Positions 1 through 23,318 of a stretch of 24,210 bases of DNA are shown in pieces (the first letter of the stretch is position 1; each line of letters starts with the position of its first letter). Position numbers and translations under genes: made by a program. Below the pieces are notes generated by a model. That model was not told the origin of the DNA. It made no database searches and saw only the letters and a program-made list of their open reading frames with translations. Location: positions 1 through 24,210 of the IMG/VR virus record IMGVR_UViG_3300016457_001310. The stretch is one strand, 5' to 3'.

Positions 1-166
1 ATGCTTTCCCCTCATACACTTCCATCGGAACAGCCTTATCTATAGCAGCAAGCATTGCGAAGGTAACGTCTTCAGTGGGGTACTCTAGGTGCTCTCTAGT
101 GACGCTCCTGAGTGGGTGGTCTATCGGAACCTTAAGCCTGTGGTAATCGAGCACTAGGTCGGGCAC
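1..166 (-). CDS. Partial ORF running off the window; N-terminus resembles the 463-aa fibre-like protein (possible paralog)
   Basis: Not in the ORF track. Manual translation from GTG at 166, with GAGGTG RBS upstream: MPDLVLDYHRLKVPIDHPLRSVTREHLEYPTEDVTFAMLAAIDKAVPMEVYEGKA..., open to the window edge. Shares V-x-R-x-x-LE-x-P...A-x-L-x-A-x-x-KA with the ORF at 1468-2859. Confidence 0.7.
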   Translation of the reverse strand, partial: MPDLVLDYHRLKVPIDHPLRSVTREHLEYPTEDVTFAMLAAIDKAVPMEVYEGKA

Positions 167-190
167 TGCTCAGCACCTCTGTGTAGTGGT

Positions 191-559
191 TTAGACGCTG
201 CCCATTATCTCCTCTATGAATCCGTAGGGGAAGCTTCTGAGTGTGCCCTGTGTCTGGGTTATCGTAACCCTGTACTTCATCGAGGCTAGCAGGGTCTTTG
301 TATGGAACCTGATGACTGGGTTGCCCAGCGGGCCAGAGAAGTCTGTGCAGATGAACTTCTGGTAGTTCTGACCATCAACAGCGATGTACTCGCACACCGT
401 CACAGCATCACCCTCAGCAAGCTGGGAGAGATCTATGTATCCCTCCACCAGGTAGTCATCGTCGTTGGGCCCGAGCTCGACAACCGTTGTCTCGGTGTTG
501 AGATCCGATGGGGATACGGTTCCGCTGTACCTGTTCTTGGTCTGGATAACTATAGGCAT
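191..559 (-). CDS. 122-aa beta-rich putative structural protein, paralog B of 5085-5453
   Basis: Gap-free alignment to the ORF at 5085-5453 with about 60/122 identities counted by hand. GGTGA RBS. Beta-strand-like alternating pattern. Confidence 0.85.
   Translation of the reverse strand: MPIVIQTKNRYSGTVSPSDLNTETTVVELGPNDDDYLVEGYIDLSQLAEGDAVTVCEYIAVDGQNYQKFICTDFSGPLGNPVIRFHTKTLLASMKYRVTITQTQGTLRSFPYGFIEEIMGSV
224..272 (+). repeat. 49-bp perfect direct repeat, copy 1
   Basis: GTAGGGGAAGCTTCTGAGTGTGCCCTGTGTCTGGGTTATCGTAACCCTG is identical to 5118-5166. It encodes RVTITQTQGTLRSFPY on the minus strand. Confidence 0.95.
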
Positions 560-661
560 CTAGGGATCACCGTGCTGGCTGGGGTCGTCGAGCAGTATCT
601 CAAGCCCGCAGATCACGATAATAAGAAAAATGATTGCGTATACGAGGAGCAGCGGATTCAT
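560..661 (-). CDS. 33-aa single-pass membrane micro-protein
   Basis: Not in the ORF track. MNPLLLVYAIIFLIIVICGLEILLDDPSQHGDP*. GGTGG RBS upstream. Stop codon abuts the ATG of the next gene at 559 and the ORF fills the gap. Confidence 0.65.
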   Translation of the reverse strand: MNPLLLVYAIIFLIIVICGLEILLDDPSQHGDP

Positions 662-675
662 ATATATATCCACCG

Positions 676-876
676 CTAGCGCTGGGGTGGCTCCGACCTC
701 TCGTCGGATGGACGCTTCCTGAAGTAGAAGAAGACCACTGTCTGCGCCAACACGATGAGCGCGCCTATAACCTGGTCGGGTAGCCTTATCAGCCCAGCTC
801 CGTGAGCTATGAAGCTACCGATGATCGAGCCCCATATCATCACGGCGAACACGTTCCTGAAGCTCGTCCTCACCAC
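676..876 (-). CDS. Small two-TM membrane protein, holin-like topology
   Basis: Two hydrophobic segments (VFAVMIWGSIIGSFIAHGAGLI; VIGALIVLAQTVVFFYF) followed by a charged tail RKRPSDERSE. Start overlaps the stop codon of the upstream hydrolase gene. Confidence 0.7.
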   Translation of the reverse strand: MVRTSFRNVFAVMIWGSIIGSFIAHGAGLIRLPDQVIGALIVLAQTVVFFYFRKRPSDERSEPPQR

Positions 877-1418
877 GGTTTCACCACCCTCGTTACATAC
901 CTAACCCAGCCCAGTCCATATATATAGAAGTGCCTGTCCCAAGTTGGTATTGCTACTTCCTGGGTCTGAGGCTCGAAGAGGATCGGTATTATCCTAGACT
1001 GCCAGTAGTCCATGCACTCCGCTGGATCCTCAGAGATGCAGTACAGAGCCACGTTATAGGCGTGGTACCCCAGGAACTCGCCCCTCTCATCAACTATCTT
1101 CCCACCAGTTTCAAACATGCAGTTGAAGCCCAGCAGAGACGCCACGACCTTTGCGAGGGCACTGAAATCATCGCAATCAATCAATCCTCTGTAGGTAAAG
1201 CCGTACTCCTCCTTTATCCTCCTAAACACCCTCAGGAACTCGACGAACGCGCTGGGGGTGAAGAAGTTGAACCAGTTGTCGACACCTATGGCAACACCAT
1301 CGTCGTAGAAAGCAACGTTCTGCCACACACCCCTACCGTAGTATTGCTCTATCAGTTGTTTCACCACGCTATCGTGGAGATAGTACTGGAACTGATAGGA
1401 TCCCATACGGAGAGACAT
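870..1418 (-). CDS. Papain/transglutaminase-like cysteine hydrolase (DCDDF...HAYN...EPQ type)
   Basis: Ordered motifs DCDDFS, GYHAYNV and LFEPQT give a Cys-His-Glu triad like the papain-like C-terminal domain of MOA-type agglutinins and related phage proteins. Confidence 0.75.
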   Translation of the reverse strand: MSLRMGSYQFQYYLHDSVVKQLIEQYYGRGVWQNVAFYDDGVAIGVDNWFNFFTPSAFVEFLRVFRRIKEEYGFTYRGLIDCDDFSALAKVVASLLGFNCMFETGGKIVDERGEFLGYHAYNVALYCISEDPAECMDYWQSRIIPILFEPQTQEVAIPTWDRHFYIYGLGWVRYVTRVVKPW

Positions 1419-1467
1419 GATCCCGCCATAAAAGTGTATAGATTGCGAGGCTATAACACTAACGCCA

Positions 1468-2859
1468 TTACCACCCCAACTTCAGCACCTTACGAAGTTT
1501 ATCGATGTGCTTATCTCTTTCCTCAGTAAGCACAGACACTCTCTCCAGCCTCTTAATCCACATGCTTATAGTTTCACGCAACACGTTGTCTGACACATTC
1601 TTCAATTGTGATCTCTGTGGCTCAATCTTATGATCTATAAGGAATCCATAATAGAAATCCGCTACCTGAAATGCCTCAAGTTCAGGTACACCCAACACAT
1701 GATACGCATAATTATCCTTGCCAGCTATCCAATAGGAGAACCTCTTCCTAAATAGACGGTATTGTTCAACAGCTTCCCTATAATCTCTCGGTGGTCTAAT
1801 AGCCATTAGACCCCTTGCTTTAGCATACTCAACCTGTCTAAGTACTGCTCCCTGGCGATACGGATTATCCCTAGTAATAACTATCAGCATGTTAGTCTCT
1901 CCCTCCCTGTAGTCAAAGGCTCCCCACGATACTGATGCAATATCTATCTGATGCTTTGGTATGCGACCAAGTAGATACTCTATCTCCTCATCGGTGAAGC
2001 CCTTAGATCGAAGCATTCTGTACCTCTTAGCCTCTACAGCCACATGCGGAGGAACGCTGTGCAGTGTTGGGTCAACCTCTCTCAGATCGCTAACTAGGAG
2101 CGGTCTAAATGGCTCGTTCACACCGTCACCAGCAACCTCAGCCTCTATCACAGCTACTGCGTTGGGTAGTTGCGAGGCAACGTCTCTGATCATACCGAAG
2201 TCTATTGCGTAGCTATCGCCCGAATAGTAGTAGTTACCGAAACGACCAGAGGAGATGCTAGTATCTGTTGCGGATATGGAGCTCCAGGCACATGGATCTA
2301 TGGTGTCGACATCACGAACCTGGCCTGGAGATGATCTACATGACTTCAATGCAGATCCAGATACCTGTAGAGACGCGTGGATAATTCCAGACAAGTCAAC
2401 TGCTTCACTAGCTAACTCGGTTTCTGTGCCATTCACAACCTTATACAGCTTGTGATCCGCTGTAGCTAGCGAAGCATCAAAGTAGTTGTAGTACAGTGTG
2501 TTTACACCGTACCACCTATTGACATTGCATATAAAGTTCGTTGATAGCTTAAATAGCTGAACAACCTTCTTATCCGTTAGAACTGTTTCGTATAATGTAC
2601 CTAGACCAGATCCTCGCTTAGTCCAGATCATCCTTGCATAGGCTTTTCCTAGGGCTCTGAGATACGCTAGTTGCGAAGTAGATGGAACCTCTAGATCAAC
2701 CCTACCCACACCACCATCCTTTATCTTCGCGCTGTCTACCGAGTTGTCACATATCGTTAGCCTCCCATAGGCATCGACACAGATGTACACCTTATCTGCT
2801 ATCATCTTCGCTAGGATCTCCCTGTTCCAGAACCCCACCCGATACTCACCCCGATCCAT
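1468..2859 (-). CDS. 463-aa putative fibre/receptor-binding protein
   Basis: N-terminal DNSVDSAKIKDGGV resembles the 'svtxaKIxDgaV' trimeric fibre repeat. Beta-rich S/G/Y-rich middle region. Located in the fibre cluster. Lower GC than its neighbours. Function is inferred. Confidence 0.6.
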   Translation of the reverse strand: MDRGEYRVGFWNREILAKMIADKVYICVDAYGRLTICDNSVDSAKIKDGGVGRVDLEVPSTSQLAYLRALGKAYARMIWTKRGSGLGTLYETVLTDKKVVQLFKLSTNFICNVNRWYGVNTLYYNYFDASLATADHKLYKVVNGTETELASEAVDLSGIIHASLQVSGSALKSCRSSPGQVRDVDTIDPCAWSSISATDTSISSGRFGNYYYSGDSYAIDFGMIRDVASQLPNAVAVIEAEVAGDGVNEPFRPLLVSDLREVDPTLHSVPPHVAVEAKRYRMLRSKGFTDEEIEYLLGRIPKHQIDIASVSWGAFDYREGETNMLIVITRDNPYRQGAVLRQVEYAKARGLMAIRPPRDYREAVEQYRLFRKRFSYWIAGKDNYAYHVLGVPELEAFQVADFYYGFLIDHKIEPQRSQLKNVSDNVLRETISMWIKRLERVSVLTEERDKHIDKLRKVLKLGW

Positions 2860-2875
2860 CTATCCCCTCGGTGCT

Positions 2876-4624
2876 TTATATTCGCTTCCTCAGCTCCTCG
2901 TAGGTTGCCCTTATGTATATGAGCGCTAGGTGGAACTGGAGGAAGTGCTCGGGCATTATCAGGTCGCCCGTCATCACAAGCATCGGGTTGCTGACGATGT
3001 CGTAGGCCTCCGAGAGGAGGCTCTCAACCTCTGGTATGCTCTCTCCCGTAGCATCCCTGTACTTGTGGTAGGTATCCCTAACGAACCTGTACAGATGTGC
3101 GCACGCCTCCATCATGTAGTTGACATGCATAGCCCTAACCTCGTCACCGCTCGAAACTGGGCTCAGCTTGGAGAGCACGCTCTCTAGGTCGCTTAGGGAG
3201 CTGGGGTAGGGCTCCGAGGTTATGGAGCTCCACAGCTCCTTGGTACCCTCCTTAACCCTGTGGATCAGGTTCAGCGGATCGTTGAAGTGGCTAGCCCTGA
3301 TAACCTCACCGAGGAGGGGCTTCTCAAGCCTATAGCCGTACACCTCCACGATCCACTTAAGGATCTCGTCTATAGCCCTACCAGCCTCGCGAAGCACCTT
3401 CAGAGGCTCCTTCCTGGTTAGGTACTCTGGAACCACATAGTCCCTCAGGATGGTCACTACCAGCCGCACAATCGATACGCTGTCGAGAGCCGTAGAAGCG
3501 TCTAGAAGGCTCTTCAGAGCGCTACGAGCAACCCTATCAAGAGCCTTAACAGCGTCCGCTACCGTGGAAGCAACAAGCTTGGCTACCCTATCCAGCGACA
3601 GAACCACATCGCTTACCGCTCTCCTAGGCTCCTTCGAGGCTAGGTACTCAGGTACAACAACGTCGAGAACGCTCCTAAGAGTAGACCTAGATACGTAGTC
3701 GCTAGCCACAGTCGCGTCATAAACCCTGAGAGGAATGCCACGACCAACCCAGTCGGTTGCCAACACAGTATCGGGTAACCTAATGGAGGGTTCCTTCGTA
3801 GCCCTATCCAGAGCCCTAGCAACATCGCTCAGGACCTTGCCCCTAACCGTCGATAGCACGTACTCGGGTACAACAGCGTCGTACACGTTCTTAACCAGCG
3901 CCCTAAAGACGCTGTCCCTAGGTATCAACGACTCGCGCCACGCCTTGGTGCTGTGCCTAACCAGGCTATCTATGCCCCTACACGCATCGAGAACCACCAC
4001 CATAGAGGTCTTCGAGAGCGCATCCGTAGCCCTACCGATGTCCCTAACCAGCTTCGCACCCTCCTTCGATAGCCTATCAAGCAACACCCCCGCATCCACC
4101 AGCGTGCGGACGAAGAAGGCTGAAACCCTAGCGAGATCTGTTAGCTTCAGAGAATCCGCCACCACCTTAGCGCTCAGCCTGCTCAGAGCATCCACAGCCC
4201 TGCCACTATCCGCTAGGGATCTCCTGAAGTGAACAGCCCTCGACACGGAGTCTACAACACTCGTCGCCTCCCTACCCACCTTCAGGGGCGCCTTGACGAG
4301 CATATCGGCTACCGCACCAGAATCCACAAACGCGCGCACGAAGTGTGCAGACACGGAGAATCCGTCTCTGCTGGTCACCGACTCGCGTACCGAGCCAGCA
4401 ACCAGCTTCGACAACGCATCGAGAATCTTAACGCCATCGAAGAGCACCTTGGATCTGTATGCTATTAAAGCATACTCGGGGATTGCATAGTCGTAGACAG
4501 CTACTGACCCCACCTTCGCAACAACGTCGCTCGCTAGAACAGTATCCGATACCTCCACGCAATAAGTAACCCCTACTAACGTGAATAGAGGTCTCTGAGC
4601 TGGTAACGCGCTGGTGAAGCTCAT
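2876..4624 (-). CDS. 582-aa repetitive structural (fibre shaft-like) protein
   Basis: About 20 degenerate D-x5-D units rich in V/A/S/R, with four (I/V)PEY variants. The C-terminal domain has three G(D/E)-x-(I/V)-x3-H repeats (GEVIRASHFN, GDEVRAMHVN, GDLIMPEHF). GGTGA RBS. Confidence 0.75.
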   Translation of the reverse strand: MSFTSALPAQRPLFTLVGVTYCVEVSDTVLASDVVAKVGSVAVYDYAIPEYALIAYRSKVLFDGVKILDALSKLVAGSVRESVTSRDGFSVSAHFVRAFVDSGAVADMLVKAPLKVGREATSVVDSVSRAVHFRRSLADSGRAVDALSRLSAKVVADSLKLTDLARVSAFFVRTLVDAGVLLDRLSKEGAKLVRDIGRATDALSKTSMVVVLDACRGIDSLVRHSTKAWRESLIPRDSVFRALVKNVYDAVVPEYVLSTVRGKVLSDVARALDRATKEPSIRLPDTVLATDWVGRGIPLRVYDATVASDYVSRSTLRSVLDVVVPEYLASKEPRRAVSDVVLSLDRVAKLVASTVADAVKALDRVARSALKSLLDASTALDSVSIVRLVVTILRDYVVPEYLTRKEPLKVLREAGRAIDEILKWIVEVYGYRLEKPLLGEVIRASHFNDPLNLIHRVKEGTKELWSSITSEPYPSSLSDLESVLSKLSPVSSGDEVRAMHVNYMMEACAHLYRFVRDTYHKYRDATGESIPEVESLLSEAYDIVSNPMLVMTGDLIMPEHFLQFHLALIYIRATYEELRKRI

Positions 4625-4658
4625 CGCCGATCACTTCTACCCGCTCCCACTCATCCAG

Positions 4659-4664
4659 AAAAAA
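4659..4664 (-). terminator. Possible oligo-T terminator
   Basis: T6 tract on the minus strand about 25 nt after the stop of the ORF at 4691-5083, in a short intergenic gap. Confidence 0.35.
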
Positions 4665-4690
4665 CATGTAGTGGACTCGGAGAGATAGCT

Positions 4691-5083
4691 CTACCTCCTT
4701 CCCAGCCTCTTCCTGAGCTCGGAGAGCGGCATACCGTCAGGGCACTTGACCGCACCGTAGAACTTCTCCTTCCATGTATAGGGGATCCACCTATAGCCTC
4801 CACACCGCTTCCAGTCGTGTAGAAGCGTGTAGAAGATCACCGTTATCAGGACGGCTATGCCCCACATACCGAAGAGCACAGCTATGAGAAAAAGGAAATC
4901 AGCGTATACCCTACCCCTAAGAGGGTAGTGCCTCCCATACGGGCTCCTAGACATGACGTGGTCGGCGAGAGCCCTCTTCACCCTCCGCTTGAACTCCCTC
5001 GGGCAGAGGATAGACGTTAGCCTACCGAAGGTGTAGAGCATGTACTGCTCAAGAGTCATCCCCTTGCCCAGCTTCCAACCCAT
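4691..5083 (-). CDS. Basic membrane protein of about 130 aa
   Basis: Track ORF 4691-5098. The ATG at 5083 with GAGGAG RBS, just after the previous stop, is the likelier start. Long hydrophobic segment FLFLIAVLFGMWGIAVLITVIFYTLL. Confidence 0.7.
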   Translation of the reverse strand: MGWKLGKGMTLEQYMLYTFGRLTSILCPREFKRRVKRALADHVMSRSPYGRHYPLRGRVYADFLFLIAVLFGMWGIAVLITVIFYTLLHDWKRCGGYRWIPYTWKEKFYGAVKCPDGMPLSELRKRLGRR

Positions 5084-5084
5084 G

Positions 5085-5453
5085 CTAGATCTCCTCAAGC
5101 ACTTGAACGACGAACCAGTAGGGGAAGCTTCTGAGTGTGCCCTGTGTCTGGGTTATCGTAACCCTGGGCTGGGCATCCTTTGGAAGCGTCATCGAGAGCA
5201 GGTGCACAACGGGGTTATCGAGAGGCCCGTCAACCGCTATGGTATCCAGCTTCCTCCTGTTAGACCCGTCGACAGCTATGTAGATAACCAGCTTCACCGA
5301 GTCACCGCTCTGGAGCTGCGATAGATCTACGTAGCCCTCCAGGATTATCGCGTTCTCGTATGTCCCGAGGTTGATCAGATCGGTCTCCACGTTCAGATCG
5401 CTGGGCGTTACGGTGCCTCGGTACTCCTCCTTACGCTTTATCCTGACTACCAT
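5085..5453 (-). CDS. 122-aa beta-rich putative structural protein, paralog A of 191-559
   Basis: Same length as and collinear with 191-559. Shared blocks GTV-PSDLN-ET, EGY-DLSQL, YIAVDG and RVTITQTQGTLRSFPY. GAGGT RBS. Confidence 0.85.
   Translation of the reverse strand: MVVRIKRKEEYRGTVTPSDLNVETDLINLGTYENAIILEGYVDLSQLQSGDSVKLVIYIAVDGSNRRKLDTIAVDGPLDNPVVHLLSMTLPKDAQPRVTITQTQGTLRSFPYWFVVQVLEEI
5118..5166 (+). repeat. 49-bp perfect direct repeat, copy 2
   Basis: Identical to 224-272. Confidence 0.95.
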
Positions 5454-5465
5454 TGCTAGGCTACC

Positions 5466-6017
5466 TCACCTGCTCATCTGTATGTAGTACCTAATCGTGA
5501 TGGCGTCCCCAGCGTCGAAGTTCACTGGGACTGGGTTGAACGTCTTCCTAGCCAGCAACACACCACCAGAGGACGCGTTGAAGACCCCAGCCTCGGAGAT
5601 CTCCATACTCCCGCTAAGCCCGTCCTCGCTTGAGAACGTAGCTTCCAGGAGCGCGGTATCGCCCTCAACATCGGTCGTTGTCTGGCTAACCGAAGCCTGC
5701 TTCCTAGCGACCTCGGCTTCGAGAGCCGTATCAGTAACGGATTCGGATGTAGTGCCAGTACCGATAGCAACATACGTGAACGGCGTGCCACCGAGGTTGA
5801 ACACCAGCTTAATGATCTCCGCGAGCCCAGCGTTCGTCACAACGTTCTTCCTGAAGTAGAAGAGTACCTGGGTCTCTGGCAGAACACCCTTGGGGATGAC
5901 AGGCACTGGGTTACCGCGAGCAAGCGTAACCAGGTACTTCGGTCTACCCCTCCTGTCCCAGACTATGACCTCTACCCAGCCAGCGATAACCACCCTAGAG
6001 CTGTCTCCCCTCCACAT
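5466..6017 (-). CDS. Tail-collar / tail-fibre-anchor-like protein
   Basis: Motif series N-VVTNAG...YVAIGTG...TDTALEAEVAR...ISEAGVFN...LLARKTF...ITIRY matches the pattern of phage tail-collar fibre (DUF3751-like) N-terminal domains. Confidence 0.75.
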   Translation of the reverse strand: MWRGDSSRVVIAGWVEVIVWDRRGRPKYLVTLARGNPVPVIPKGVLPETQVLFYFRKNVVTNAGLAEIIKLVFNLGGTPFTYVAIGTGTTSESVTDTALEAEVARKQASVSQTTTDVEGDTALLEATFSSEDGLSGSMEISEAGVFNASSGGVLLARKTFNPVPVNFDAGDAITIRYYIQMSR

Positions 6018-6053
6018 AGCTGGCTTCCCCCATCAAAGCCCTTCTCCTACCAC

Positions 6054-6061
6054 CTTATAAA
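6054..6061 (-). promoter_or_regulatory. TATA box candidate for the fibre cluster
   Basis: TTTATAAG on the minus strand in an intergenic gap, about 37 nt upstream of the ATG at 6017. Confidence 0.55.
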
Positions 6062-6068
6062 TACGCTT

Positions 6069-6197
6069 CTATCCCTGCACAACGTACTTGACCCTGCCCT
6101 CCCTGTCCCTAACAATGATCTCAAGCCTAACGGATGTCCTAGCCGAGTCGAGCCTATGCGGTCTATAGCTCCGCCTAGCAACGGTCTCCCGCTTCAC
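6069..6197 (-). CDS. 42-aa mini-ORF duplicating the N-terminal hairpin of the downstream 183-aa protein
   Basis: Not in the ORF track. MKRETVARRSYRPHRLDSARTSVRLEIIVRDREGRVKYVVQG*. LEIIVRDREGRVKYVV aligns with VEVIVWDRRGRPKYLV of 5466-6017. G-rich RBS upstream of the GTG. Confidence 0.6.
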   Translation of the reverse strand: MKRETVARRSYRPHRLDSARTSVRLEIIVRDREGRVKYVVQG

Positions 6198-6247
6198 CTT
6201 CTCTACCCCAACCCTCTACGCGCTAGGAAAGTATATACCTCTATACA

Positions 6248-7369
6248 CTAGTCGGATACTATCTCCACCAGCCTCAGAGCTATGATATCCCATCTATACT
6301 CCTTCGAGAGCACCTTCTCTCTCCATTCCCGTACCCTCGCCTTGTACTCGTCTAGGTTATCCAGGATTACGTGCAACTTGTTGAGAGCGTCCTCGACATC
6401 GACAGCGTAGCCGTAGCCACCGTGAAAGGCGTTTCCTGGTAGGGGCTGAACCCTCCTACCCTTCTTGACCCACAGGAACGGGGGTACGTACTCAGACCAC
6501 GAACCGTACTCGCATGCGAGCACTGGCACACCCCTAGCAAGCGATTCTAGAGCAACCATCTCGAAGCCACCGCCTCGGCTGAACATCAGGGTTACGTCAG
6601 CCATATCGAAGAGCGCCATCTTCTCGTAGTCGCTCAGCCACTCGTATACCTGAAGTGCGCCGTACTGCATGACCTGCTGGTACTCGGGTATGTTGGGGAA
6701 CACCGTCTTCAGGACCAGAGCAACATCCTTCCTCTCCCTAGCAAGCCTGGTATACACCTCGTACACCTCTGGCCAGCCCTTCCTCTCACCGCTGTGGACA
6801 AGGAAGAACAGTATGAACTTCTTGTTCCTCCTCATCTTATAGAGGTAGAGCTGCACAAGCGATGAGCTGAGCCTCTGCCTCGGCGCGATCTCCCATACAT
6901 TGGGTGTTGTATACCACTCAGGGTCGACACCGTGCGGAAGCCTGTAGACCCTAGCCCTCACCCCAGACCTCCTAGCCACCTCCACACAGAAGCTGGAGGG
7001 CACGACGAACTTGTCGAACCTGTTAGCTATGGAGACCGCGTAGTCGGTATACGCATCGGAGTCGCAGACATCTATACCTATGAGCTGGTCGTAGAAGCCC
7101 CTCCACCACTGGTAGTAGTCCTCCCTAAACCTACCCCATATATCCTTCCTGCTCTCAAGAACCCTAAACATGATGAAGAAGCCTGGGTGTAGAATCAGGG
7201 AGTACTTGGTCGATGGCGTGAACGCTGGTACCATAAGCTCGTCGAGCTCGTACACCGACACATACCCAAGCCTCCTCATATACTCCAGATGCTTCCTCGC
7301 CACCAGCGTGAAGCTGACGGTGTGCCACTGAGGATAGGCATAGAGTATCGGCTTCAAGACTAGCCCCAC
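6248..7369 (-). CDS. GT-B fold family 4 glycosyltransferase, archaeal filamentous virus type
   Basis: VVPSSF, LPHGVD, ERKG and FSRGGGFEMVALESLARGVPVL, a variant of the E-x7-E motif with Gly at the first Glu. Confidence 0.9.
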   Translation of the reverse strand: MGLVLKPILYAYPQWHTVSFTLVARKHLEYMRRLGYVSVYELDELMVPAFTPSTKYSLILHPGFFIMFRVLESRKDIWGRFREDYYQWWRGFYDQLIGIDVCDSDAYTDYAVSIANRFDKFVVPSSFCVEVARRSGVRARVYRLPHGVDPEWYTTPNVWEIAPRQRLSSSLVQLYLYKMRRNKKFILFFLVHSGERKGWPEVYEVYTRLARERKDVALVLKTVFPNIPEYQQVMQYGALQVYEWLSDYEKMALFDMADVTLMFSRGGGFEMVALESLARGVPVLACEYGSWSEYVPPFLWVKKGRRVQPLPGNAFHGGYGYAVDVEDALNKLHVILDNLDEYKARVREWREKVLSKEYRWDIIALRLVEIVSD

Positions 7370-7413
7370 CCCACTCCATGTAGATGGGTAACCGTGGAGA
7401 AGCTGAAAAACGT

Positions 7414-8127
7414 CTAATGCTGTACCAAGCCAAGCGCCTTCACTACCCAGTAAACGACCTCAGATGCCCCCCTAGGCGGCTCGTCAAAGTTGGTGATAGC
7501 CGTGGCGTCCCTAATGTGGTAGAGCGCGGGTATAGGAGTGTCCCTAACATCGCTCGTAAAGCCGTGGTCTGACACCACCAGCCACCGCCTAGGCTTGAAC
7601 GTCTCTATCAGGTCGAGAGCCAGCTTGCATGCCAGGTCGTACCACTCTATCGCTGTTCTAAGCGCGTCTATGCTTGGTATGGTGGAGAAGAAGTGGTGAT
7701 GAGGCTGATCGGGTACGGGGTACCAAACGAAGAGGATATCCGCATCCCCGTTAGCCTTTACGTAGCTGTGGTACTTCATCAACACCTCCCTAAACCGCTC
7801 CTTAGGCGGCGAGAAGAAGTCCACCCAGTTAGCAGGCCTCGGAACGCCGTGGTATATCGGTGGCATGCATGCTGGTATATTGATAGCCTTTACCCTCCTA
7901 CCCGTAACGAGATCCCATACCCAGGTCGTTATGGTTCCAGGAACGAACTTCCTTAGCTGGAAGAAGGTTGCCATAACCGTGGGGGTCTCTGGAATCACAT
8001 CGACGTACATCATGCAGCGCTTAGCCCCTGGATAGCTCCAGAGCCTACGTATACTCTCTCCCCACCAACAAAACACATTTGCAAAGACGTAGCTGAGACC
8101 GTCTAGCACCACCACCAGGACATCCAT
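7414..8127 (-). CDS. Alkaline phosphatase superfamily protein (phosphodiesterase/sulfatase/phosphotransferase-like)
   Basis: Metal-binding motifs in canonical order: VVVLDG, Thr nucleophile in ETPT, PDQPHH, VVSDHGF and a late His (LYH). Confidence 0.8.
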   Translation of the reverse strand: MDVLVVVLDGLSYVFANVFCWWGESIRRLWSYPGAKRCMMYVDVIPETPTVMATFFQLRKFVPGTITTWVWDLVTGRRVKAINIPACMPPIYHGVPRPANWVDFFSPPKERFREVLMKYHSYVKANGDADILFVWYPVPDQPHHHFFSTIPSIDALRTAIEWYDLACKLALDLIETFKPRRWLVVSDHGFTSDVRDTPIPALYHIRDATAITNFDEPPRGASEVVYWVVKALGLVQH

Positions 8128-10909: not shown

Positions 10910-13900
10910 CTACCTACCGTATATTGTCTGTATGCGTTTCTTCTCAAGCTCCGCACCGTCAACTATCAGCGCTATCTCATCATCGGTGAGACCGTACTTC
11001 TTGAGAGCCTGTAGCTTCTGTATCAGGGTGTTCCTATCTATGATACCGTTGGCGTAGGCGTAGACCAGCCTGTTGCGGTACCACGCTATCTGCCTCCACA
11101 CGATGCGGTTCCTAGCCAGCTTCTTGTAGTACTCTATCTGCTTCTGGTACCTCGCTACGTCTATACCCCTAGCTCTGAGCACATCGCTGAGGATCTGCTC
11201 CCACTCTGGTATGTACCTGGCATCGGCTACGAGCTGGCGGATGGTCGGTACCAGCCAGCTAAGCACCCTGTACTCCTTGCGTAGCTGGAGAGCGAGGCTG
11301 AACACCTCAAGCTCCTTCCCGACCCAGCCGCCCTTCCTCATCCACTCAGCTACCTTGCTAGCGACCTCGCGAGACACCGTGAAGTACTCGTAGAGCCTCC
11401 TGTACTCAGCAACGAGCTGGTTCACCTCGCCCGCTATAGACCTAGCCTCTATGTACCTCAGCCACAGATCGGCAAAGTCCTTGGGAACCCTCCTAAGCTG
11501 TAGCACCCTATCGATTATGGTTCTGGGCACCTCGATGTACTCGACCATGGACGCTATGGTTCCTAGGCTAGGTACGTACTCCCTAGCGGACTCTATGAGT
11601 AGCTCGTAGTATACGCGCTTCTCGATCAGCTCTATCTCCTTCGGGGTGAAGCCGTAGCTCTTAGCGTCGTCGAGGAGCTTCTTCCACTCATCCTCAGAGA
11701 TAACACCGTACCTGAGAGCCCTAGCAGCAACGCTTAGAACCGCCTTGTAGTCGCTCTTAACTGGCCTCACCTGTATGTATTTCAGCCATATATCTATCCA
11801 CTCCTGTGGAACCCTCCTAGCCTCAAGCACCTTCCTAATCAGATCCTCCTTGAGCACGAGATACTCAGCCAGCGTTGCGAGCATCGTCGGTGTCGGTAGG
11901 TAGGCTCTCCTAAGCTCCATAGCCTCGGCAATCTCCTCCTCCAGATCCACGCGCTCCTTGATGAACTCGATCTCCTTGGATGTGAAGCCGTACTGACCGA
12001 GCTTATCTATGAACTCCTCCAGCTCCTTCTTGGTGATAACACCGTACCTGAGAGCCCTTATCTTGACCGAGAGCAACGACTTGACATCGCTCTTAATAGG
12101 CTTAGCCTCTATGTACTTCTTCCAGTAGTCTATCCACTCATCGGCTACCCTATGGTACTTCAGAGCGCTCAGAACCTTGTCCTCGGGCAAGACAATGTAC
12201 TCAGCAAGTGTTGCGAGCTGCGACGGTGTTGGAATCCTAACCTTAGCCTCCTCCAGCTTCTCCTCCAAGTCTATCCTATCCCTAAGTATCTTGATCTCCT
12301 CGTCGGTGAAGCCGTACTCCTTAGCCTTATCGATTATCTCGTCAAGCCTCTTCTTCTCTATGACGTTACGTAGGTAGGCACGGATAGCCACAGATATGTA
12401 CGCCTTGTAGTCGCTCTTCAGCGGCTTTACCTCTATATACTTCTCCCATATCTCCCTCCACTTCTCGGATACGCCATACCTCTTCAGAGCCTCCTCAACG
12501 AGATCCTTGGGTAGCGCTAGGTACTCGGCTAGAACCGCCAGCGTCGATGGAGACGGAATCCTCTCCCTAGCCGCCTGCCTAAGCTCGTCTATCCTCCTCT
12601 CGAAGGCGGCTATAACGTTGTACATCACCCACTCATGAGGCGCTATACCGAACGCCTGGAACACGTCCCTGTTAGCGTCGTAGAACGCAAGCAGCTTCTT
12701 AGCCTCGTCAGCACCCTCGATAACCAGCTCACCGCCCCTCACGGTGAACTTCATAGAGTACTTACTGAGTATATCCACGACCTCGTCGATGCCCATACCC
12801 AGAGCAAGCGCGTTGTATATCCTGGTCCTGAGAAGCGTCAGCTCGTCCTGTATCGGCTTCCTAGCAACGTAGAGCCTCCAGTACTGAAGCTCGTCGCTCG
12901 GCATGTTGAAGTGCTCCAAAGCCTTCAGGCTCGTGCTGATGGCTTCGGGCACGATCTCTAGGAGGGTCGCGTAGGTTGTTAGACCAGGCGTGTACCAGAC
13001 CACGTTGGCGTCTATATACTTCTTGGCGAGATCCTCGGAGAAGCCCAGCTTCTTGAGTTGCTCGATAGCCTCCGAGACGGCTATCCTCCTCGATCTGAGC
13101 AGGTTGATGATCGCCTTAGCCTTGACCTCCCTCTCGAACCTATAGACCATGAACTCCACGGAGAGCTCTATCGCCTCCCTAACGATGGGGTGCTCATGCA
13201 TCTTCTCCACTAGCTTGGATACCCAGCCCTTGGCCTCGTCAATCGTTACATAGCCGTAGCGCAGAGCCCATAACACCGACCACAGCAGGTACCTAGCGTA
13301 GAACCTCGTGCGCTCCCTAGCCTCAAGCTCTATGATCGCCTCGGCATACTTGCTCCAGGCCTCCCAGTAGCCAGTATCTAGCACTAGGGACAGCTCCTTG
13401 CCAGTGAGGCTCTTTACCGTCTGCTTGAAGAACTTCTCGTTTATCGCGCTGACAATATCGGCAATGATCTCCCTAGCCTTGGCTGGATCCACCACGTAGT
13501 AGGCTACGCTGCGTATGATGTACCTATACGCCTCTCTGTAGATATCGAGAGCCCTATCCATAGTTGCCCTGATCTCCAGGAGCTTGGACTCGGCTGGTAG
13601 GAACGCTATCGGGTACTCAACGGTTGCCGATACCCAGTCCCTCTTCTCTAGGTCGAAGTAGCCTACCTCGAACTTAACCGTGAAGAAACCCGAGAGTAGC
13701 TGGTGTAGGTGGTCTAGGCTCCATATACCCTCCTTGTATAGGTTGATGAAGCCAGTTCTGAGCAGTGTGCGCTCCTCGGTTAGGGCGTTTATTGTCTCGG
13801 CTATCGCTACCCACGGTATCCAGTACGGGTGTATACCCGTAGCCTGCAACACCCTACAGAACTGCTTGAGGTCGAAGACTATCTCACCCTTCTTCAGGTA

Positions 13901-16900
13901 CTGGAGGTAGAGATCCGCCATCGGTCTAGCCGACGCAGTGGTGCCCTCGGGTATGAGACTCTTGGTTATCTCGTGGATAGCCTTCTTCAGACCGATGCCG
14001 TATGCAGACCAGTAGTCGAAGAGGCCCCACCTTGTCATCCATCTCAGGTCTATCTTGGTGGGTATGTCAGCCATAAGCTCGATCATTATGGCGTTATCGG
14101 TTGGCCACCCAGGTTGCCACGGAAACCTGGCATAGTCATGCCACTTCATGTAGGTGCTGATCATCTTTTGCAACAAATCATATCTGAAGTTCAGCTCCTT
14201 GGGAGCCACAGCCTTCACAACCGTTGGGTCTAGACCGAAGGTCTTCATTATGTTCTCGTCGACTGGTGCCTCAGGGTTCCACAGCTCACCAGCGATACCC
14301 CTCCAGAAGAACTCTGCTAGCTTCTCTGGCGGTGGGTACCTGTAGTGCAGTAAGTAGAACATGAACGCCACGTCTGGCGTGAAGCCGTGCATAGCCATAA
14401 CTGCCGCAAAGTGCCTTGGATCCTGTATGATGTCCCTCACCATCATCCTAGCTAGCTCGCTCGGGCTCGGTATTGCCCACACCATCGATACTGGGAAGAG
14501 CCTCTCCTTCCTGGTGTATGACGTAAACCTATCCCATATCCTCAGAGCCCCCAGCTCCCTATCGTAGAGCTCGGATACATTGCCGAGTTGCTTAGCGACC
14601 TCCTCAGCGAGCTTGGTATTGAGACCATAGATCCTCTCTATAAAGCCCTTGTAGATACCACCCATCCTGAGCTGGTCTACAAACATCTTGTAGTTGTCCA
14701 TGAGTATCGGTGTCGGTATAGACCTCCTAACCAAGTTGAGAGTGTGCTCCATTGGTGGAAGCTCGACGGTTACGTACTCGGTCAGGTTGTACCTAGTGAT
14801 TGCCCTGGTTGGCTCGGCCCACCATATCATGTGGCCTATGATCATGTACCTCGCTACGTCTGGCATGAACTTCTCGAACTGCGAAACAGCCTTCTCAAGA
14901 ACGTCCTTCAGCTTCAGTCTTATCCTAGCACCGACACCGAGTGGCTCACCACTTATCTCGGTATCTGGTAACGCAGATACCAAGGGCTTCAGTATGAGGC
15001 CAACACCGTAGATGGCGGCCGATATCAGCACGCCAACGTTGAGCAGGTTGTATATGAACCTCACGGGGTTCTTCTTGGCCTCCTCTATCACCTCGCCGAG
15101 CTTCTCGACCATTATCGGTGTGAGCGGTAGTAGTATAGCCTCGATTATGGGGAACCATGGAGACGCAAGTATCTCGTAGAGCGCTGGGCTAGACCTAGCC
15201 ACTATCAGGTTGGTTATAGCCTTCATAGCGTTGCCGATAGCTGTAGCGATATCCTTACCGACCTCTCCAATAACCGAGATAACAGTCATTACAGCTCTGC
15301 CTACCCACGAAGCAAGCGTCTTAAATGCCGAGACAAACCAGTTACCGAGTCCCGTCAGGATGTTCCATAGCCACTGCGCACCCTCGACGATCTTCTGTCC
15401 GATCCACTGTAGAGAGTTCCAAACTGTCGTTACTAGCCTCTCTGGTAGCTGCATAACCGCGTTCACGAAGCCAGTGAGGTAGACACCCACCAGCTTCAGG
15501 TTCTCAGACACCTTGGTAAGAGCCTCGCCTAGCTTCGCGAAGCCCTCGCTTACCAGCGTTCCGAGCTTGGTCAGGTAGTCCCACAGTGATATGCCTACCT
15601 CTCTAAGCGTCCCGAAGACGATCTGCGGAATCCTCTGGATCTCCTCAACAACACCGCTTACCAGCGACGGGAACTGCTCGGTGAAGAACCTAGCCACCGT
15701 CTCCAGTCCGCTCCTAACCATGTCTAGGAACTGGGTGAACGCCTCGGTAATGGGCTTCACAACGTTCTCGCTGATCCACGTGCCTAGACCAGCTACCGCC
15801 TCCTTTACCTGGTCTACGAGGCTCGGAAGCGTCTCGGCTATGAAGCTCCTAACGGTCTCGAACCCCTCGGAGATGAAGCCGATCAGGTTCTCAAGAGCGC
15901 CCCTAAGCGGGGCGAGCACGTTGCTCTGGATGAAGCTCCATATACCCGCTAGGGCGCTCTGGATCTGGCTAACCATGCTAGCGATAGCCGACGATACGCT
16001 TCCGAGACCCTGCTGAACCGCTGATAGGATGCTCTGCACAGCCGATGTTAGAGGCGCGATAACGTTCTGCTGGATCCACGAAGCGATCCCCGCAACAGCA
16101 TCGCGGAGCTGAGCAACGAAACTATTGATGTAGCTCGGCAACTCCTCGGTGAAGAACCTAGATACGGTCTGTAGACCGCTGTTGATGAAGTCTATGAAGC
16201 TCTGGAAAGCCGCTGTTAGGGGTGCTACAACGTTCTCCTGTACCCAGGTAGCTATTCCAGATAGCGTCTGCTGTATAGACGCAATAGCCTGGCTTACGAA
16301 TGCTGGTAGCTCCTCGGTGAAGAACCTGGAGACCGTCTCCAGACCGCTACTAATTAGCTGTATCAACTGGCTAAACGCGTTGCTCAGCGGTGCAACAACG
16401 TTCTCCTGGATCCAGGTGGCTAGCTCACCAACAGCTTGCTGAACCATCGCTGGTATCTGCGACACAAAGCTCGTCACGGTGTCGAGACCGCGTGTAATCG
16501 TCTCTATCAGGTTATTTACAGCGGTTAGCAGGGGTGTGACCACATAGTCGTTTATCAGCGTGCTGATGTCGCTTATCCATTTCTGGAGCTCCGCAAACAT
16601 CTGCGGAACGGTCTCGGTGAAGAACGTCGTTAGCGTCGATATGCCCTGGCTGATCCAGCTCATCAGGTTGTTAATAGCGCTGAACAGCGGGTCGATTATG
16701 TCCTCCTGTATCCAGCTCCATACACCGCTTATCTGGCGACTTAGCCAATCCAGAGCGTTCTCAACCGTGCCTGGTATCTGCTGTAGGAAGCTCCACACCT
16801 GCTCAACGAGGTTCTTGATCGTGTCGAGGAACGGCTTAGCTACCGTGTCCCAGAGCCTGCGACCTATCTCCTCGACCGTCTGAGCAAACCAGGAGGCGAG

Positions 16901-17158
16901 CTCGCTCATACGGTCGTAGAGCCACTGCTGTAGCTGTCCAATCGGGTCGGTGATGCCGTGCTCCGAGGTAACGAGAGCCTCTAGATCGAGCTCCTCTAGA
17001 TCCCTGATAACCGTTACGGTGAAGACCTCCTCGATACCCTTGCTCCACCTAAGCTCCCATAGACCAGCCGCGCTGAGAGTAGCCGCTAGGTACTTAGCGT
17101 CCTCGGCGGTGAAGAGCTCCAGCCTCTGATGGCTGGTCACAGCTACACCCGAGAACAA
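10910..17158 (-). CDS. Giant (about 2080 aa) virion terminal-structure/fibre protein with tape-measure-like N-terminus and C-terminal helical repeats
   Basis: Uninterrupted 6.2-kb ORF. Residues ~70-660 carry amphipathic W/F-periodic repeats (WIQENVVAPL...GLETVSRFFTEELP). The C-terminal third has ~6 repeats starting P(S/T)PxxLAxLAEY, several with YGFTxxEI. The GTG at 17140 (RBS GGGTG) is an alternative start. Confidence 0.85.
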   Translation of the reverse strand: MFSGVAVTSHQRLELFTAEDAKYLAATLSAAGLWELRWSKGIEEVFTVTVIRDLEELDLEALVTSEHGITDPIGQLQQWLYDRMSELASWFAQTVEEIGRRLWDTVAKPFLDTIKNLVEQVWSFLQQIPGTVENALDWLSRQISGVWSWIQEDIIDPLFSAINNLMSWISQGISTLTTFFTETVPQMFAELQKWISDISTLINDYVVTPLLTAVNNLIETITRGLDTVTSFVSQIPAMVQQAVGELATWIQENVVAPLSNAFSQLIQLISSGLETVSRFFTEELPAFVSQAIASIQQTLSGIATWVQENVVAPLTAAFQSFIDFINSGLQTVSRFFTEELPSYINSFVAQLRDAVAGIASWIQQNVIAPLTSAVQSILSAVQQGLGSVSSAIASMVSQIQSALAGIWSFIQSNVLAPLRGALENLIGFISEGFETVRSFIAETLPSLVDQVKEAVAGLGTWISENVVKPITEAFTQFLDMVRSGLETVARFFTEQFPSLVSGVVEEIQRIPQIVFGTLREVGISLWDYLTKLGTLVSEGFAKLGEALTKVSENLKLVGVYLTGFVNAVMQLPERLVTTVWNSLQWIGQKIVEGAQWLWNILTGLGNWFVSAFKTLASWVGRAVMTVISVIGEVGKDIATAIGNAMKAITNLIVARSSPALYEILASPWFPIIEAILLPLTPIMVEKLGEVIEEAKKNPVRFIYNLLNVGVLISAAIYGVGLILKPLVSALPDTEISGEPLGVGARIRLKLKDVLEKAVSQFEKFMPDVARYMIIGHMIWWAEPTRAITRYNLTEYVTVELPPMEHTLNLVRRSIPTPILMDNYKMFVDQLRMGGIYKGFIERIYGLNTKLAEEVAKQLGNVSELYDRELGALRIWDRFTSYTRKERLFPVSMVWAIPSPSELARMMVRDIIQDPRHFAAVMAMHGFTPDVAFMFYLLHYRYPPPEKLAEFFWRGIAGELWNPEAPVDENIMKTFGLDPTVVKAVAPKELNFRYDLLQKMISTYMKWHDYARFPWQPGWPTDNAIMIELMADIPTKIDLRWMTRWGLFDYWSAYGIGLKKAIHEITKSLIPEGTTASARPMADLYLQYLKKGEIVFDLKQFCRVLQATGIHPYWIPWVAIAETINALTEERTLLRTGFINLYKEGIWSLDHLHQLLSGFFTVKFEVGYFDLEKRDWVSATVEYPIAFLPAESKLLEIRATMDRALDIYREAYRYIIRSVAYYVVDPAKAREIIADIVSAINEKFFKQTVKSLTGKELSLVLDTGYWEAWSKYAEAIIELEARERTRFYARYLLWSVLWALRYGYVTIDEAKGWVSKLVEKMHEHPIVREAIELSVEFMVYRFEREVKAKAIINLLRSRRIAVSEAIEQLKKLGFSEDLAKKYIDANVVWYTPGLTTYATLLEIVPEAISTSLKALEHFNMPSDELQYWRLYVARKPIQDELTLLRTRIYNALALGMGIDEVVDILSKYSMKFTVRGGELVIEGADEAKKLLAFYDANRDVFQAFGIAPHEWVMYNVIAAFERRIDELRQAARERIPSPSTLAVLAEYLALPKDLVEEALKRYGVSEKWREIWEKYIEVKPLKSDYKAYISVAIRAYLRNVIEKKRLDEIIDKAKEYGFTDEEIKILRDRIDLEEKLEEAKVRIPTPSQLATLAEYIVLPEDKVLSALKYHRVADEWIDYWKKYIEAKPIKSDVKSLLSVKIRALRYGVITKKELEEFIDKLGQYGFTSKEIEFIKERVDLEEEIAEAMELRRAYLPTPTMLATLAEYLVLKEDLIRKVLEARRVPQEWIDIWLKYIQVRPVKSDYKAVLSVAARALRYGVISEDEWKKLLDDAKSYGFTPKEIELIEKRVYYELLIESAREYVPSLGTIASMVEYIEVPRTIIDRVLQLRRVPKDFADLWLRYIEARSIAGEVNQLVAEYRRLYEYFTVSREVASKVAEWMRKGGWVGKELEVFSLALQLRKEYRVLSWLVPTIRQLVADARYIPEWEQILSDVLRARGIDVARYQKQIEYYKKLARNRIVWRQIAWYRNRLVYAYANGIIDRNTLIQKLQALKKYGLTDDEIALIVDGAELEKKRIQTIYGR

Positions 17159-22892: not shown

Positions 22893-23318
22893 TCAGATGA
22901 TCTCGGATAGCTTTTTGGCTCGGTCGAACATCTGTTTTGTGATTACGTACCTAACGCCTTTCTCCCACTGTTGCTTCTCAAGAACCTCAAGTGGGAATAC
23001 GTACCACTGCTTCTCTTCCGAGACCCTGACCGCTATGTATGCCTCTCCCCCTGCTCTCCTAGCGAAGTTCTCCAGCATCCACACCTTGGGCGCGGCGAGG
23101 TATATCGCGTCTCTATGTTTCCTGAGCTTAACCTCGAAGACCAGAACCCTGTACCTAGAACCATCGAACTTAACAGCGAAGACATCTGGATAGAAAACCC
23201 TTCTTGTCTTAGCACCAGAGGCGGGGGCTCTCATTACTGCATACCCTGCTCTTCTAAGCTTCTTAACCAGCTCCAGCTCAGCTTGCTTACCCCTTCGATA
23301 GAAGCTCATTTCCAGCAC
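22893..23318 (-). CDS. hjc: Archaeal Holliday junction resolvase (Hjc family, PD-(D/E)xK)
   Basis: RRGKQAELELVKKLRRAGYAVMRAPASG...YPDVFAV...VFEVK...LENFARRAGG-AYIAVR...W is the full Hjc motif set. Confidence 0.93.
   Translation of the reverse strand: MLEMSFYRRGKQAELELVKKLRRAGYAVMRAPASGAKTRRVFYPDVFAVKFDGSRYRVLVFEVKLRKHRDAIYLAAPKVWMLENFARRAGGEAYIAVRVSEEKQWYVFPLEVLEKQQWEKGVRYVITKQMFDRAKKLSEII

What the first reader, a model, noticed from the sequence alone, without database searches (positions are those of the whole stretch)
191..5453. Perfect 49-bp direct repeat inside diverged paralogs brackets a 4.9-kb fibre/host-range cassette
Seen: the two 122-aa genes are only about 49% identical, and their other conserved blocks differ at synonymous sites (YIAVDG is TAC ATC GCT GTT GAT GGT in one and TAC ATA GCT GTC GAC GGG in the other). 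Yet 16 consecutive codons (224-272 and 5118-5166) are identical at every base. Between them lie the 582-aa and 463-aa fibre-like genes, the cysteine hydrolase and three membrane proteins. Inference: recent gene conversion, or a maintained recombination site. A crossover between the repeats would delete or amplify the cassette, leave an intact in-frame hybrid 122-aa gene, and bring the alternative fibre-like gene (starting at 166) next to the collar gene. That would be an accordion or switch mechanism for receptor-binding modules, possibly resolved by the viral Hjc.
Basis: partly seen in the sequence, partly recalled or inferred. Interest (0 to 1): 0.8.

Follow-up and report, generated by a model that had tools for sequence, protein, structure and literature searches.

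The report
Gene-conversion patch between two viral paralogs
Two anciently diverged copies of a small jelly-roll virion gene in an uncultivated filamentous archaeal virus share a perfect 49-base stretch because short patches of DNA were recently copied between them, not because the stretch is a built-in switch for swapping fibre genes.

Summary
Bases 224-272 and 5118-5166 are identical. They lie at the same codons (third base of codon 96 to codon 112) of two 122-aa minus-strand genes that are 49% identical in protein. Chance is excluded: P about 3e-7 from codon usage, and no run longer than 29 nt in 3,260 control pairs.

The two genes belong to two deep clades (A and B) of a widespread family with a confidently predicted jelly-roll fold. 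The block encodes the family's most conserved motif.

Fifteen other genomes that carry both paralogs show no such nucleotide identity. Close strains of this virus do not show it either. L040 keeps an A-type 5' half, and L094 (99% identical) and L002 keep a B-type patch. Every block difference from those strains makes the window copy equal to its own paralog (7/7 and 5/5).

This is therefore recent, lineage-specific, bidirectional short-tract gene conversion.

I found no support for a maintained recombination site or an accordion. No hybrid gene or deletion junction appears in any assembly or protein cluster. The block is not conserved at nucleotide level in relatives. Cassette variants among strains break elsewhere. 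A crossover there remains geometrically possible and untested at read level.

The parts
224..272 (-). 49-nt block, copy in paralog A (third base of codon 96 to codon 112; peptide RVTITQTQGTLRSFPY)
5118..5166 (-). 49-nt block, copy in paralog B, same codon register
250..270 (-). Minimal B-to-A converted tract in pA. Seven differences from the closest A ortholog (L040) span codon 97 position 2 to codon 104 position 1, and all equal pB. The flanking codons 88-96 and 113-122 are identical to L040.
5130..5145 (-). Minimal A-to-B converted tract in pB. Six of the 15 differences from the 99%-identical strain L094 fall within these 16 nt (codons 103-108), and all equal pA.
191..559 (-). pA, 122 aa, clade A of the jelly-roll family
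5085..5453 (-). pB, 122 aa, clade B. In 41 of 43 clade-B members the gene directly follows a col183 homolog.
5466..6017 (-). col183. Its C-terminal ~125 aa resemble tail-fibre, tail-collar-fibre and baseplate proteins of tailed phages. It is the conserved upstream partner of pB.
4691..5098 (-). 135-aa protein with a hydrophobic segment (residues 63-94). Its start overlaps the pB stop.
2876..4624 (-). f582. A repeat-containing protein family of variable length, present near col183/pB in most relatives.
1468..2859 (-). f463. It has a conserved N-terminal ~56 aa. The rest is replaced by an unrelated ~150-aa C-terminal part in strains L040 and L030.
870..1418 (-). 182-aa protein with no family assignment
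676..876 (-). 66-aa protein with two hydrophobic segments
1..166 (-). N-terminus of a second f463-family gene (X), cut by the contig end. It is full length (421 aa, 42% identical to f463) in strain L040.
22893..23318 (-). Viral Holliday-junction resolvase (Pfam Hjc, E 2.2e-21)

Best explanation
Setting (shown). The window is a whole metagenomic contig of an uncultivated filamentous archaeal virus with two rudivirus-type coat proteins. pA and pB are ancient paralogs of a small single-jelly-roll protein.

What the block encodes (shown). Codons 97-112 encode the penultimate beta-strand, a turn and the start of the last strand. This is the family's most conserved motif, so it is the stretch where the two genes were already most alike.

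What happened (inferred). In this lineage only, heteroduplex formed between the two copies, which lie 4.9 kb apart in direct orientation on one genome or on sister genomes in an infected cell. It was resolved as short non-crossover patches. pA received at least 21 nt of B-type sequence (5' half of the block). pB received at least 16 nt of A-type sequence (3' half). Both copies now read 'B 5' half + A 3' half', which gives 49 identical bases.

Number of events (not decided). This could be two independent short-tract conversions. It could also be one reciprocal event with heteroduplex on opposite sides of a break on both duplexes, resolved without crossover. The viral or host Hjc is a plausible resolvase.

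Why the tracts stop at the block edges (inferred). Homology ends there. Longer tracts would also overwrite paralog-specific residues and be selected against.

Consequence. The repeat is a by-product with no dedicated function. It is a latent substrate for a rare 4,894-bp deletion.
For: 1. Identity far above chance.
2. A tree of 83 family members splits into two clades with 96/99 support. pA lies in clade A. pB lies in clade B, where 41 of 43 members directly follow col183. The genes are therefore old paralogs, not a recent duplication.
3. Window pA versus its closest ortholog L040: 92.5% identity outside the block and 100% in the codons flanking it, but 7 mismatches in the 24 nt of the block's 5' half. 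All 7 equal pB, against 4 of 24 differences outside the block.
4. Window pB versus the 99%-identical strain L094: 6 of 15 differences fall within 16 nt inside the block (permutation P = 2e-5), and all equal pA. Against L002, 5 of 5 block differences equal pA, compared with 9 of 29 outside.
5. Fifteen other A/B pairs within one genome have longest exact runs of 8-23 nt, and none is homogenised in the C-terminal block. In the 14 pairs tallied codon by codon there is no codon excess in the block.
6. The sequence is reproduced by independent assemblies and samples.
7. Uncoordinated short-patch resolution of heteroduplex is documented in the hyperthermophilic crenarchaeon Sulfolobus acidocaldarius (PMC3367456).
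8. A structure model (pLDDT 97.7) places the block on strands 97-104 and 110-121 of a jelly roll.
Against: - The polarity of the pB patch rests on two comparators (L094, L002). Their own patch could be the derived state, because the more distant B orthologs L003 and L004 have CTC AGA / CTC AGG like the window.
- The clustering of pA differences taken alone is only marginal (permutation P = 0.08). The case for pA rests on the 7/7 polarity.
- No reads were available, so low-frequency crossover products cannot be excluded.
- Whether L002 and L040 come from one genome is unknown.
- Involvement of Hjc is pure inference.
Confidence: 0.78

Rival explanations
1. The block is a maintained recombination site. 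Crossovers between the two copies delete, excise or amplify the 4.9-kb cassette as a regulated or selected accordion or switch for receptor-binding modules.
For: - The repeats are direct, in register and 49 nt long. A crossover would leave an in-frame hybrid next to gene X.
- A viral Hjc is present.
- The region between and around the paralogs is hypervariable among strains.
- In most two-copy relatives the A and B genes also flank f582/f463-family genes.
- A few clade-A bodies carry B-like C-terminal tails.
Against: - Relatives show no nucleotide conservation of the block, including 15 other pairs within one genome.
- Close strains lack the identity.
- No hybrid protein is present in the 90% clusters drawn from about 15 billion proteins.
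- Every contig that spans the region has the parental arrangement.
- Observed cassette variants break at the f463 N-terminal module, inside f582, or between pB and m135, never at the block.
- The 'cassette-less' relative L111 keeps both paralogs intact in tandem, which a crossover would not produce.
- No site-specific recombinase lies near by.
Confidence: 0.07
2. The identity is kept by selection on the nucleotide sequence itself, for example an RNA structure, a protein-binding site or an expression signal for the downstream genes.
For: Both copies lie 20-58 nt upstream of the next gene's start.
Against: - Relatives conserve the peptide but not the codons.
- There is no Rfam match in the window.
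- Folding of either copy in its context is no better than shuffled sequence (z = -0.8 and +0.4).
- The distances to the downstream starts differ between the two copies.
Confidence: 0.03
3. The identity is an assembly artefact or a chimera of co-occurring strains.
For: - Strains about 1% and about 10% divergent co-occur in related samples.
- All long contigs end 150-200 nt beyond pA.
Against: - Two JGI contigs and an ENA assembly are 100% identical across both copies.
- The pB copy recurs in four more samples.
- The junctions 'A-specific flank + B-type half block' must exist in reads, because the unconverted strains share at most about 25-29 nt, less than typical final k values (inference).
- The k=31 Logan contig breaks exactly at k-1 inside the block.
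Confidence: 0.03
4. The identity arose by chance or by shared codon bias on an invariant peptide.
For: The peptide is the most conserved in the family.
Against: P = 3.2e-7. None of 3,260 control pairs has a run longer than 29 nt. The block uses rare codons.
Confidence: 0.01

Closest known systems
Interlocus (ectopic) gene conversion between paralogs, giving mosaic or concerted evolution
   Same: A short tract of perfect identity sits inside otherwise old, diverged paralogs. The tract groups by genome while the flanks group by paralog clade. Sister lineages lack it. It is confined to the most similar, most constrained segment.
   Different: The tracts are very short (at least 16-21 nt, at most 49 nt). 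Both copies were changed, in opposite halves. The setting is an uncultivated filamentous archaeal virus, for which I know of no described case; my literature search found none, but it was not exhaustive.
Short-patch, uncoordinated mismatch resolution during homologous recombination in Sulfolobus acidocaldarius (Mao and Grogan 2012, PMC3367456)
   Same: Heteroduplex between moderately diverged DNAs is resolved in short independent patches, producing mosaics over a few tens of bases.
   Different: That work used experimental transformation of a cellular chromosome. Here the evidence is a natural footprint in a viral genome whose host is unknown. The mechanism is inferred by analogy only.
Phage host-range switches that use repeats inside fibre genes (Mu G segment / P1 C segment invertases, shufflons)
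   Same: Repeats lie within coding sequence next to fibre-like genes, so recombination yields in-frame alternative genes.
   Different: Those systems use inverted repeats conserved at nucleotide level and a dedicated serine or tyrosine recombinase next to the segment. Here the repeats are direct, are not conserved in relatives, and no such recombinase is present.
Poxvirus-type gene accordions (recombination-driven copy-number expansion and contraction)
   Same: Direct repeats flanking a host-interaction locus could in principle allow amplification or loss.
   Different: No copy-number variant, junction or hybrid was found. This could not be tested at read level.

Membership tests
Interlocus gene conversion tract | Run of identity between paralogs significantly longer than expected from their divergence | tested here: met
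   49 nt against a maximum of 29 in 3,260 control pairs; codon-usage P = 3.2e-7
Interlocus gene conversion tract | Paralogs are old, so the flanks group by paralog type across genomes while the tract groups by genome | tested here: met
   Clades A and B have 96/99 support. The block is identical within the window but differs from orthologs L040, L002 and L094.
Interlocus gene conversion tract | Differences from unconverted orthologs are clustered in the tract and polarised toward the paralog in the same genome | tested here: met
   7/7 and 5/5 inside the block against 4/24 and 9/29 outside. Six of 15 differences from L094 lie within 16 nt, P = 2e-5.
Interlocus gene conversion tract | Both copies are physically on one replicon | tested here: met
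   Three assemblies give contiguous 15.4 kb spanning both copies. Read-level phasing was not possible.
Programmed recombination switch / excisable host-range cassette | Recombination sites conserved at nucleotide level among relatives | tested here: not met
Programmed recombination switch / excisable host-range cassette | Dedicated site-specific recombinase encoded next to the segment | tested here: not met
   Pfam scans of the ORFs tested across the window found only Hjc, 17 kb away
Programmed recombination switch / excisable host-range cassette | Alternative junctions or hybrid genes present in populations | tested here: not met
   No hybrid in the protein clusters. All spanning contigs are parental. 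Reads were not available, so rare forms remain untested.
Gene accordion | Copy-number variation of the flanked segment | not testable with these tools
   Needs read depth or long reads
Adnaviria-type filamentous archaeal virus (genome context) | Rudivirus/lipothrixvirus-type major capsid protein(s) | tested here: met
   Two adjacent genes match Pfam Sulf_coat_C (1e-12 and 9e-12). One is 25-30% identical to rudivirus coat proteins.
Adnaviria-type filamentous archaeal virus (genome context) | Linear A-form dsDNA genome in a helical virion | not testable with these tools
   Metagenomic contig only
Single jelly-roll (TNF/C1q-like) structural proteins | Eight-stranded beta-sandwich with jelly-roll topology | tested here: met
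   AlphaFold2 model with pLDDT 97.7 and eight strands. Foldseek matches birnavirus VP2 jelly roll, Ena appendage subunits, a phage cement protein, TNF/C1q heads and tail-fibre tips at E 1e-3 to 4e-5 and TM 0.5-0.7. This is fold similarity only; homology and oligomeric state are unknown.

The most novel reading that the evidence does not exclude
Both paralogs may have been altered in opposite halves of one 49-nt interval by a single reciprocal event. That would mean heteroduplex on both duplexes on opposite sides of a break, that is, a double Holliday junction resolved without crossover by the viral or host Hjc. The block would then be a natural fossil of that intermediate in an archaeal virus. 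The resulting perfect repeat would now prime occasional loss or gain of the fibre cassette.
Probability: 0.12. Interest if true: 0.55.

Novelty: new member of a known kind. Interest (0 to 1): 0.33.

Why it matters
The mechanism is ordinary: ectopic gene conversion between paralogs. The case is unusually clean, with population-level comparators, and it comes from filamentous viruses of hyperthermophilic archaea, where recombination is hard to study.

It shows that exchange tracts of a few tens of bases operate between viral paralogs 4.9 kb apart. It also shows how such exchange creates perfect repeats that could later mediate deletions.

The by-products may matter more than the repeat itself:
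- A large uncharacterised jelly-roll family with two ancient clades, one of them strictly coupled to a protein with a phage tail-fibre-like domain.
- A hypervariable fibre module with swaps of the C-terminal domain between strains.

Both give concrete candidates for the unknown terminal and host-recognition apparatus of these viruses.

Tried and rejected
- DNA search of window 1-8000 against 50,697 phage and archaeal-virus records found no match. tblastn of pB and of the 448-aa gene against the same collection also found nothing. No cultured relative is available.
- Pfam and PHROGs give nothing for the window's own pA and pB. Ten of 83 family members give a weak FNIII-A_GpJ match, with best E 3.5e-4. 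A PDB profile search gave only noise.
- The 'cysteine hydrolase' label for the 182-aa gene is unsupported. PDB sequence searches with col183 and f463 were uninformative.
- A search for the 49-mer in IMG/VR found only the window itself. The extra 4 kb of the longer JGI contig holds no further copy of the block or of the gene.
- GC-biased repair as the cause of the shared mosaic was rejected. By my own reading of the codons, the retained alleles include T over C and A over C.
- A single unequal crossover was rejected as the explanation, because both genes keep their own clade-specific sequence on both sides of the block.
- An exact-protein look-up of Hjc failed, probably because the called start differs.
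- I tried to call hybrid A/B genes across the family from body-versus-tail profiles. A few discordant members exist, but the classes grade into each other, so I do not count them as evidence.
Full report
**What the window is.** The window is the complete IMG/VR contig IMGVR_UViG_3300016457_001310.
- It encodes two adjacent coat proteins with the Sulfolobus-virus coat fold (Pfam Sulf_coat_C, 1e-12 and 9e-12). One is 25-30% identical to rudivirus coat proteins.
- It also encodes two glycosyltransferases, a methyltransferase, a 2,082-aa repeat protein and an Hjc resolvase at 22893-23318.
- No cultured virus matches it at DNA level.
- It is therefore an uncultivated filamentous, Adnaviria-type archaeal virus. 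Relatives occur in hot-spring and Guaymas Basin metagenomes and are scattered over MAG bins of several phyla, so the host is unknown.

**The observation.**
- The repeat is exactly as described: 224-272 equals 5118-5166, and 218-272 / 5112-5166 is 55 nt at 96%, with spacing 4,894.
- Both copies sit at gene nt 288-336 of two 122-aa minus-strand genes, pA (191-559) and pB (5085-5453). The genes are 49% identical in protein without gaps.
- Outside the block, 21 of 43 conserved degenerate residues share a codon. Inside it, 16 of 16 do, including rare codons.
- The probability of 16 identical codons given the peptide and this genome's codon usage is 3.2e-7.
- Among 3,260 pairs of family members from different genomes with similar divergence, the longest exact run has median 9 and maximum 29.

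**It is not an assembly product.**
- A second JGI contig (28,306 nt) and an ENA assembly (25,997 nt) are 100% identical to the window over 15.4 kb, including both copies.
- Four further samples carry pB contigs at 99-99.95% identity with the identical block.
- A Logan contig built with k=31 ends exactly 30 nt into the pB copy, the k-1 overhang expected where a true repeat makes the graph branch.

**What the genes are.**
- The family is large: 234 stretches in JGI metagenomes and at least 165 protein clusters at E < 1e-30.
- A maximum-likelihood tree of 83 distinct members has two deep clades with 96/99 support.
  - pB falls in clade B, where 41 of 43 members lie directly downstream of a homolog of the 183-aa gene (5466-6017).
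  - pA falls in clade A, whose members sit in more variable contexts, often next to f463-family or f582-family genes.
- The 183-aa protein carries a C-terminal domain 30-39% identical to tail-fibre, tail-collar-fibre and baseplate proteins of tailed phages.
- An AlphaFold2 model built on the 83-sequence alignment is very confident (pLDDT 97.7, pTM 0.88) and is an eight-stranded beta-sandwich.
  - Its Foldseek matches are single jelly rolls: birnavirus VP2, Ena appendage subunits, a phage cement protein, TNF/C1q heads and fibre tips.
  - Residues 97-112 form the penultimate strand, a turn and the start of the last strand.
  - They are the most conserved motif in the family.
- The two genes are therefore old paralogs of a small structural jelly-roll protein. 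This is fold similarity only; their role in the virion is inferred.

**Do relatives keep the block identical? No.**
- Sixteen other loci carry two copies (one carries three), mostly in direct orientation 3-5.5 kb apart and flanking fibre-type genes.
- Their paralog pairs have longest exact runs of 8-19 nt and no codon excess in the block.
- In L111 the two genes are tandem, only 19 nt apart, and the block is still not homogenised.
- Nucleotide identity is thus not a property of the family. This argues against a conserved site and against a nucleotide-level functional element.
- There is no Rfam match in the window, and the block region folds no better than shuffled sequence.

**What close strains show.**

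*L040* is the closest pA ortholog.
- It is 92.5% identical to window pA outside the block and 100% identical in codons 88-96 and 113-122.
- It differs at 7 of the 24 bases of the block's 5' half and at none of the 3' half.
- All 7 window states equal pB and the B orthologs L002 and L003, whereas only 4 of 24 differences outside the block do.
- So pA acquired a B-type 5' half. The converted markers span window 250-270.

*L094* comes from another sample.
- It is 99% identical to the window over 912 nt, with 15 differences.
- Six of them lie within 16 nt of the block (window 5130-5145, codons 103-108). The permutation P is 2e-5, and all six window states equal pA.

*L002* (about 90% identical) differs from window pB at 5 positions in codons 106-108. 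Again all window states equal pA, against 9 of 29 outside the block.

*Conclusion and caveats.*
- pB acquired, or in those strains lost, an A-type 3' patch. The window block is a mosaic of a B-type 5' half and an A-type 3' half, present in both genes.
- This needs either two short conversions in opposite directions or one reciprocal event with heteroduplex on both duplexes. I cannot tell which.
- L003 and L004 share CTC AGA / CTC AGG with the window, so the L094/L002 patch may itself be derived.
- Either way, patches of 10-25 nt are being exchanged at this site among 99%-identical strains.
- Uncoordinated short-patch resolution of heteroduplex is documented in Sulfolobus acidocaldarius (PMC3367456). 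Applying it here is an analogy.

**The accordion or switch idea.**
- The geometry is right: the repeats are direct, in register and in frame; gene X starts at 166; and an Hjc is encoded.
- I looked for its products and found none.
  - The 90% clusters of pA and pB hold three and two sequences, all parental types, with no B-body/A-tail or A-body/B-tail protein.
  - All contigs that span the region are parental.
- The module does vary between strains, but at other breakpoints:
  - In L040 and L030 the f463 gene keeps its first 56 aa and carries an unrelated ~150-aa C-terminal part.
  - L090 lacks 255 nt at the f582 start.
  - L003 has a 269-aa gene inserted between pB and the 135-aa gene.
  - L030 lacks the 182-aa and 66-aa genes.
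- A few clade-A genes with B-like tails hint at old exchanges downstream of the block, but the classes grade into each other.
- Rare crossover products cannot be excluded without reads.

**Verdict.** The gene-conversion reading is supported. The maintained-site and accordion reading is not supported. The phenomenon is a well-documented instance of a known process in an unusual setting. The repeat itself is most likely a by-product.

Noticed in passing
window 1468-2859; L040:695-1315; L030:239-829: The gene at the f463 position keeps a conserved N-terminal ~56 aa (84% identical). In two close strains it carries an unrelated ~150-aa C-terminal part (206 aa and 196 aa instead of 463 aa). This is the anchor-plus-swappable-head pattern typical of receptor-binding proteins.
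   Followed up: partly
window 5466-6017: The C-terminal ~125 aa of the 183-aa protein are 30-39% identical to tail-fibre, tail-collar-fibre and baseplate proteins of tailed phages. Hits include a Nitrososphaera provirus and Thermus phage P23-45. A caudoviral fibre domain in a filamentous archaeal virus is unexpected.
   Followed up: partly
window 1-200; L085, L086, L102-L104: All long contigs of this virus end 150-200 nt downstream of pA, inside gene X. All three contigs of the L040-type strain end in or shortly after the end of X, two of them about 150 nt past it. This could be a genome terminus, a repeat or a strain-variable spot; it is unexplained.
   Followed up: no
L111:9383-12308: A 52.9-kb scaffold binned as Thermofilales has col183, B, A and an X/f463-like gene in a row, with B and A only 19 nt apart. 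This suggests the paralogs arose as a tandem duplication and that the window's 4.5-kb cassette lies between former neighbours.
   Followed up: partly
window 4425-4679 (L090): A 99.7%-identical strain lacks 255 nt covering the start of the 582-aa gene and its upstream spacer.
   Followed up: no
L003:3205-4014: An ~81%-identical strain has an extra 269-aa gene between pB and the 135-aa membrane-type gene.
   Followed up: no
window 10910-17158: A 2,082-aa protein with internal repeats of about 56 and 108-112 aa (nucleotide families D1-D4, D6, D7, D10). It is conserved with variable length in most relatives. Its function is unknown.
   Followed up: no
window 5106-5131 versus L022-L026: Window pB shares a 26-nt exact run, spanning the end of the block and the B-type tail, with genes only about 50% identical from other metagenomes. 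This is at the extreme of the control distribution and may reflect exchange between viruses.
   Followed up: no
window 24210 end; L095:1-4700: The same JGI dataset holds a 28,306-nt contig that extends the window by about 4 kb. The extension carries further genes, including an STIV_B116-like protein. The ENA scaffold continues differently, into an SSO2105_N-domain gene.
   Followed up: no
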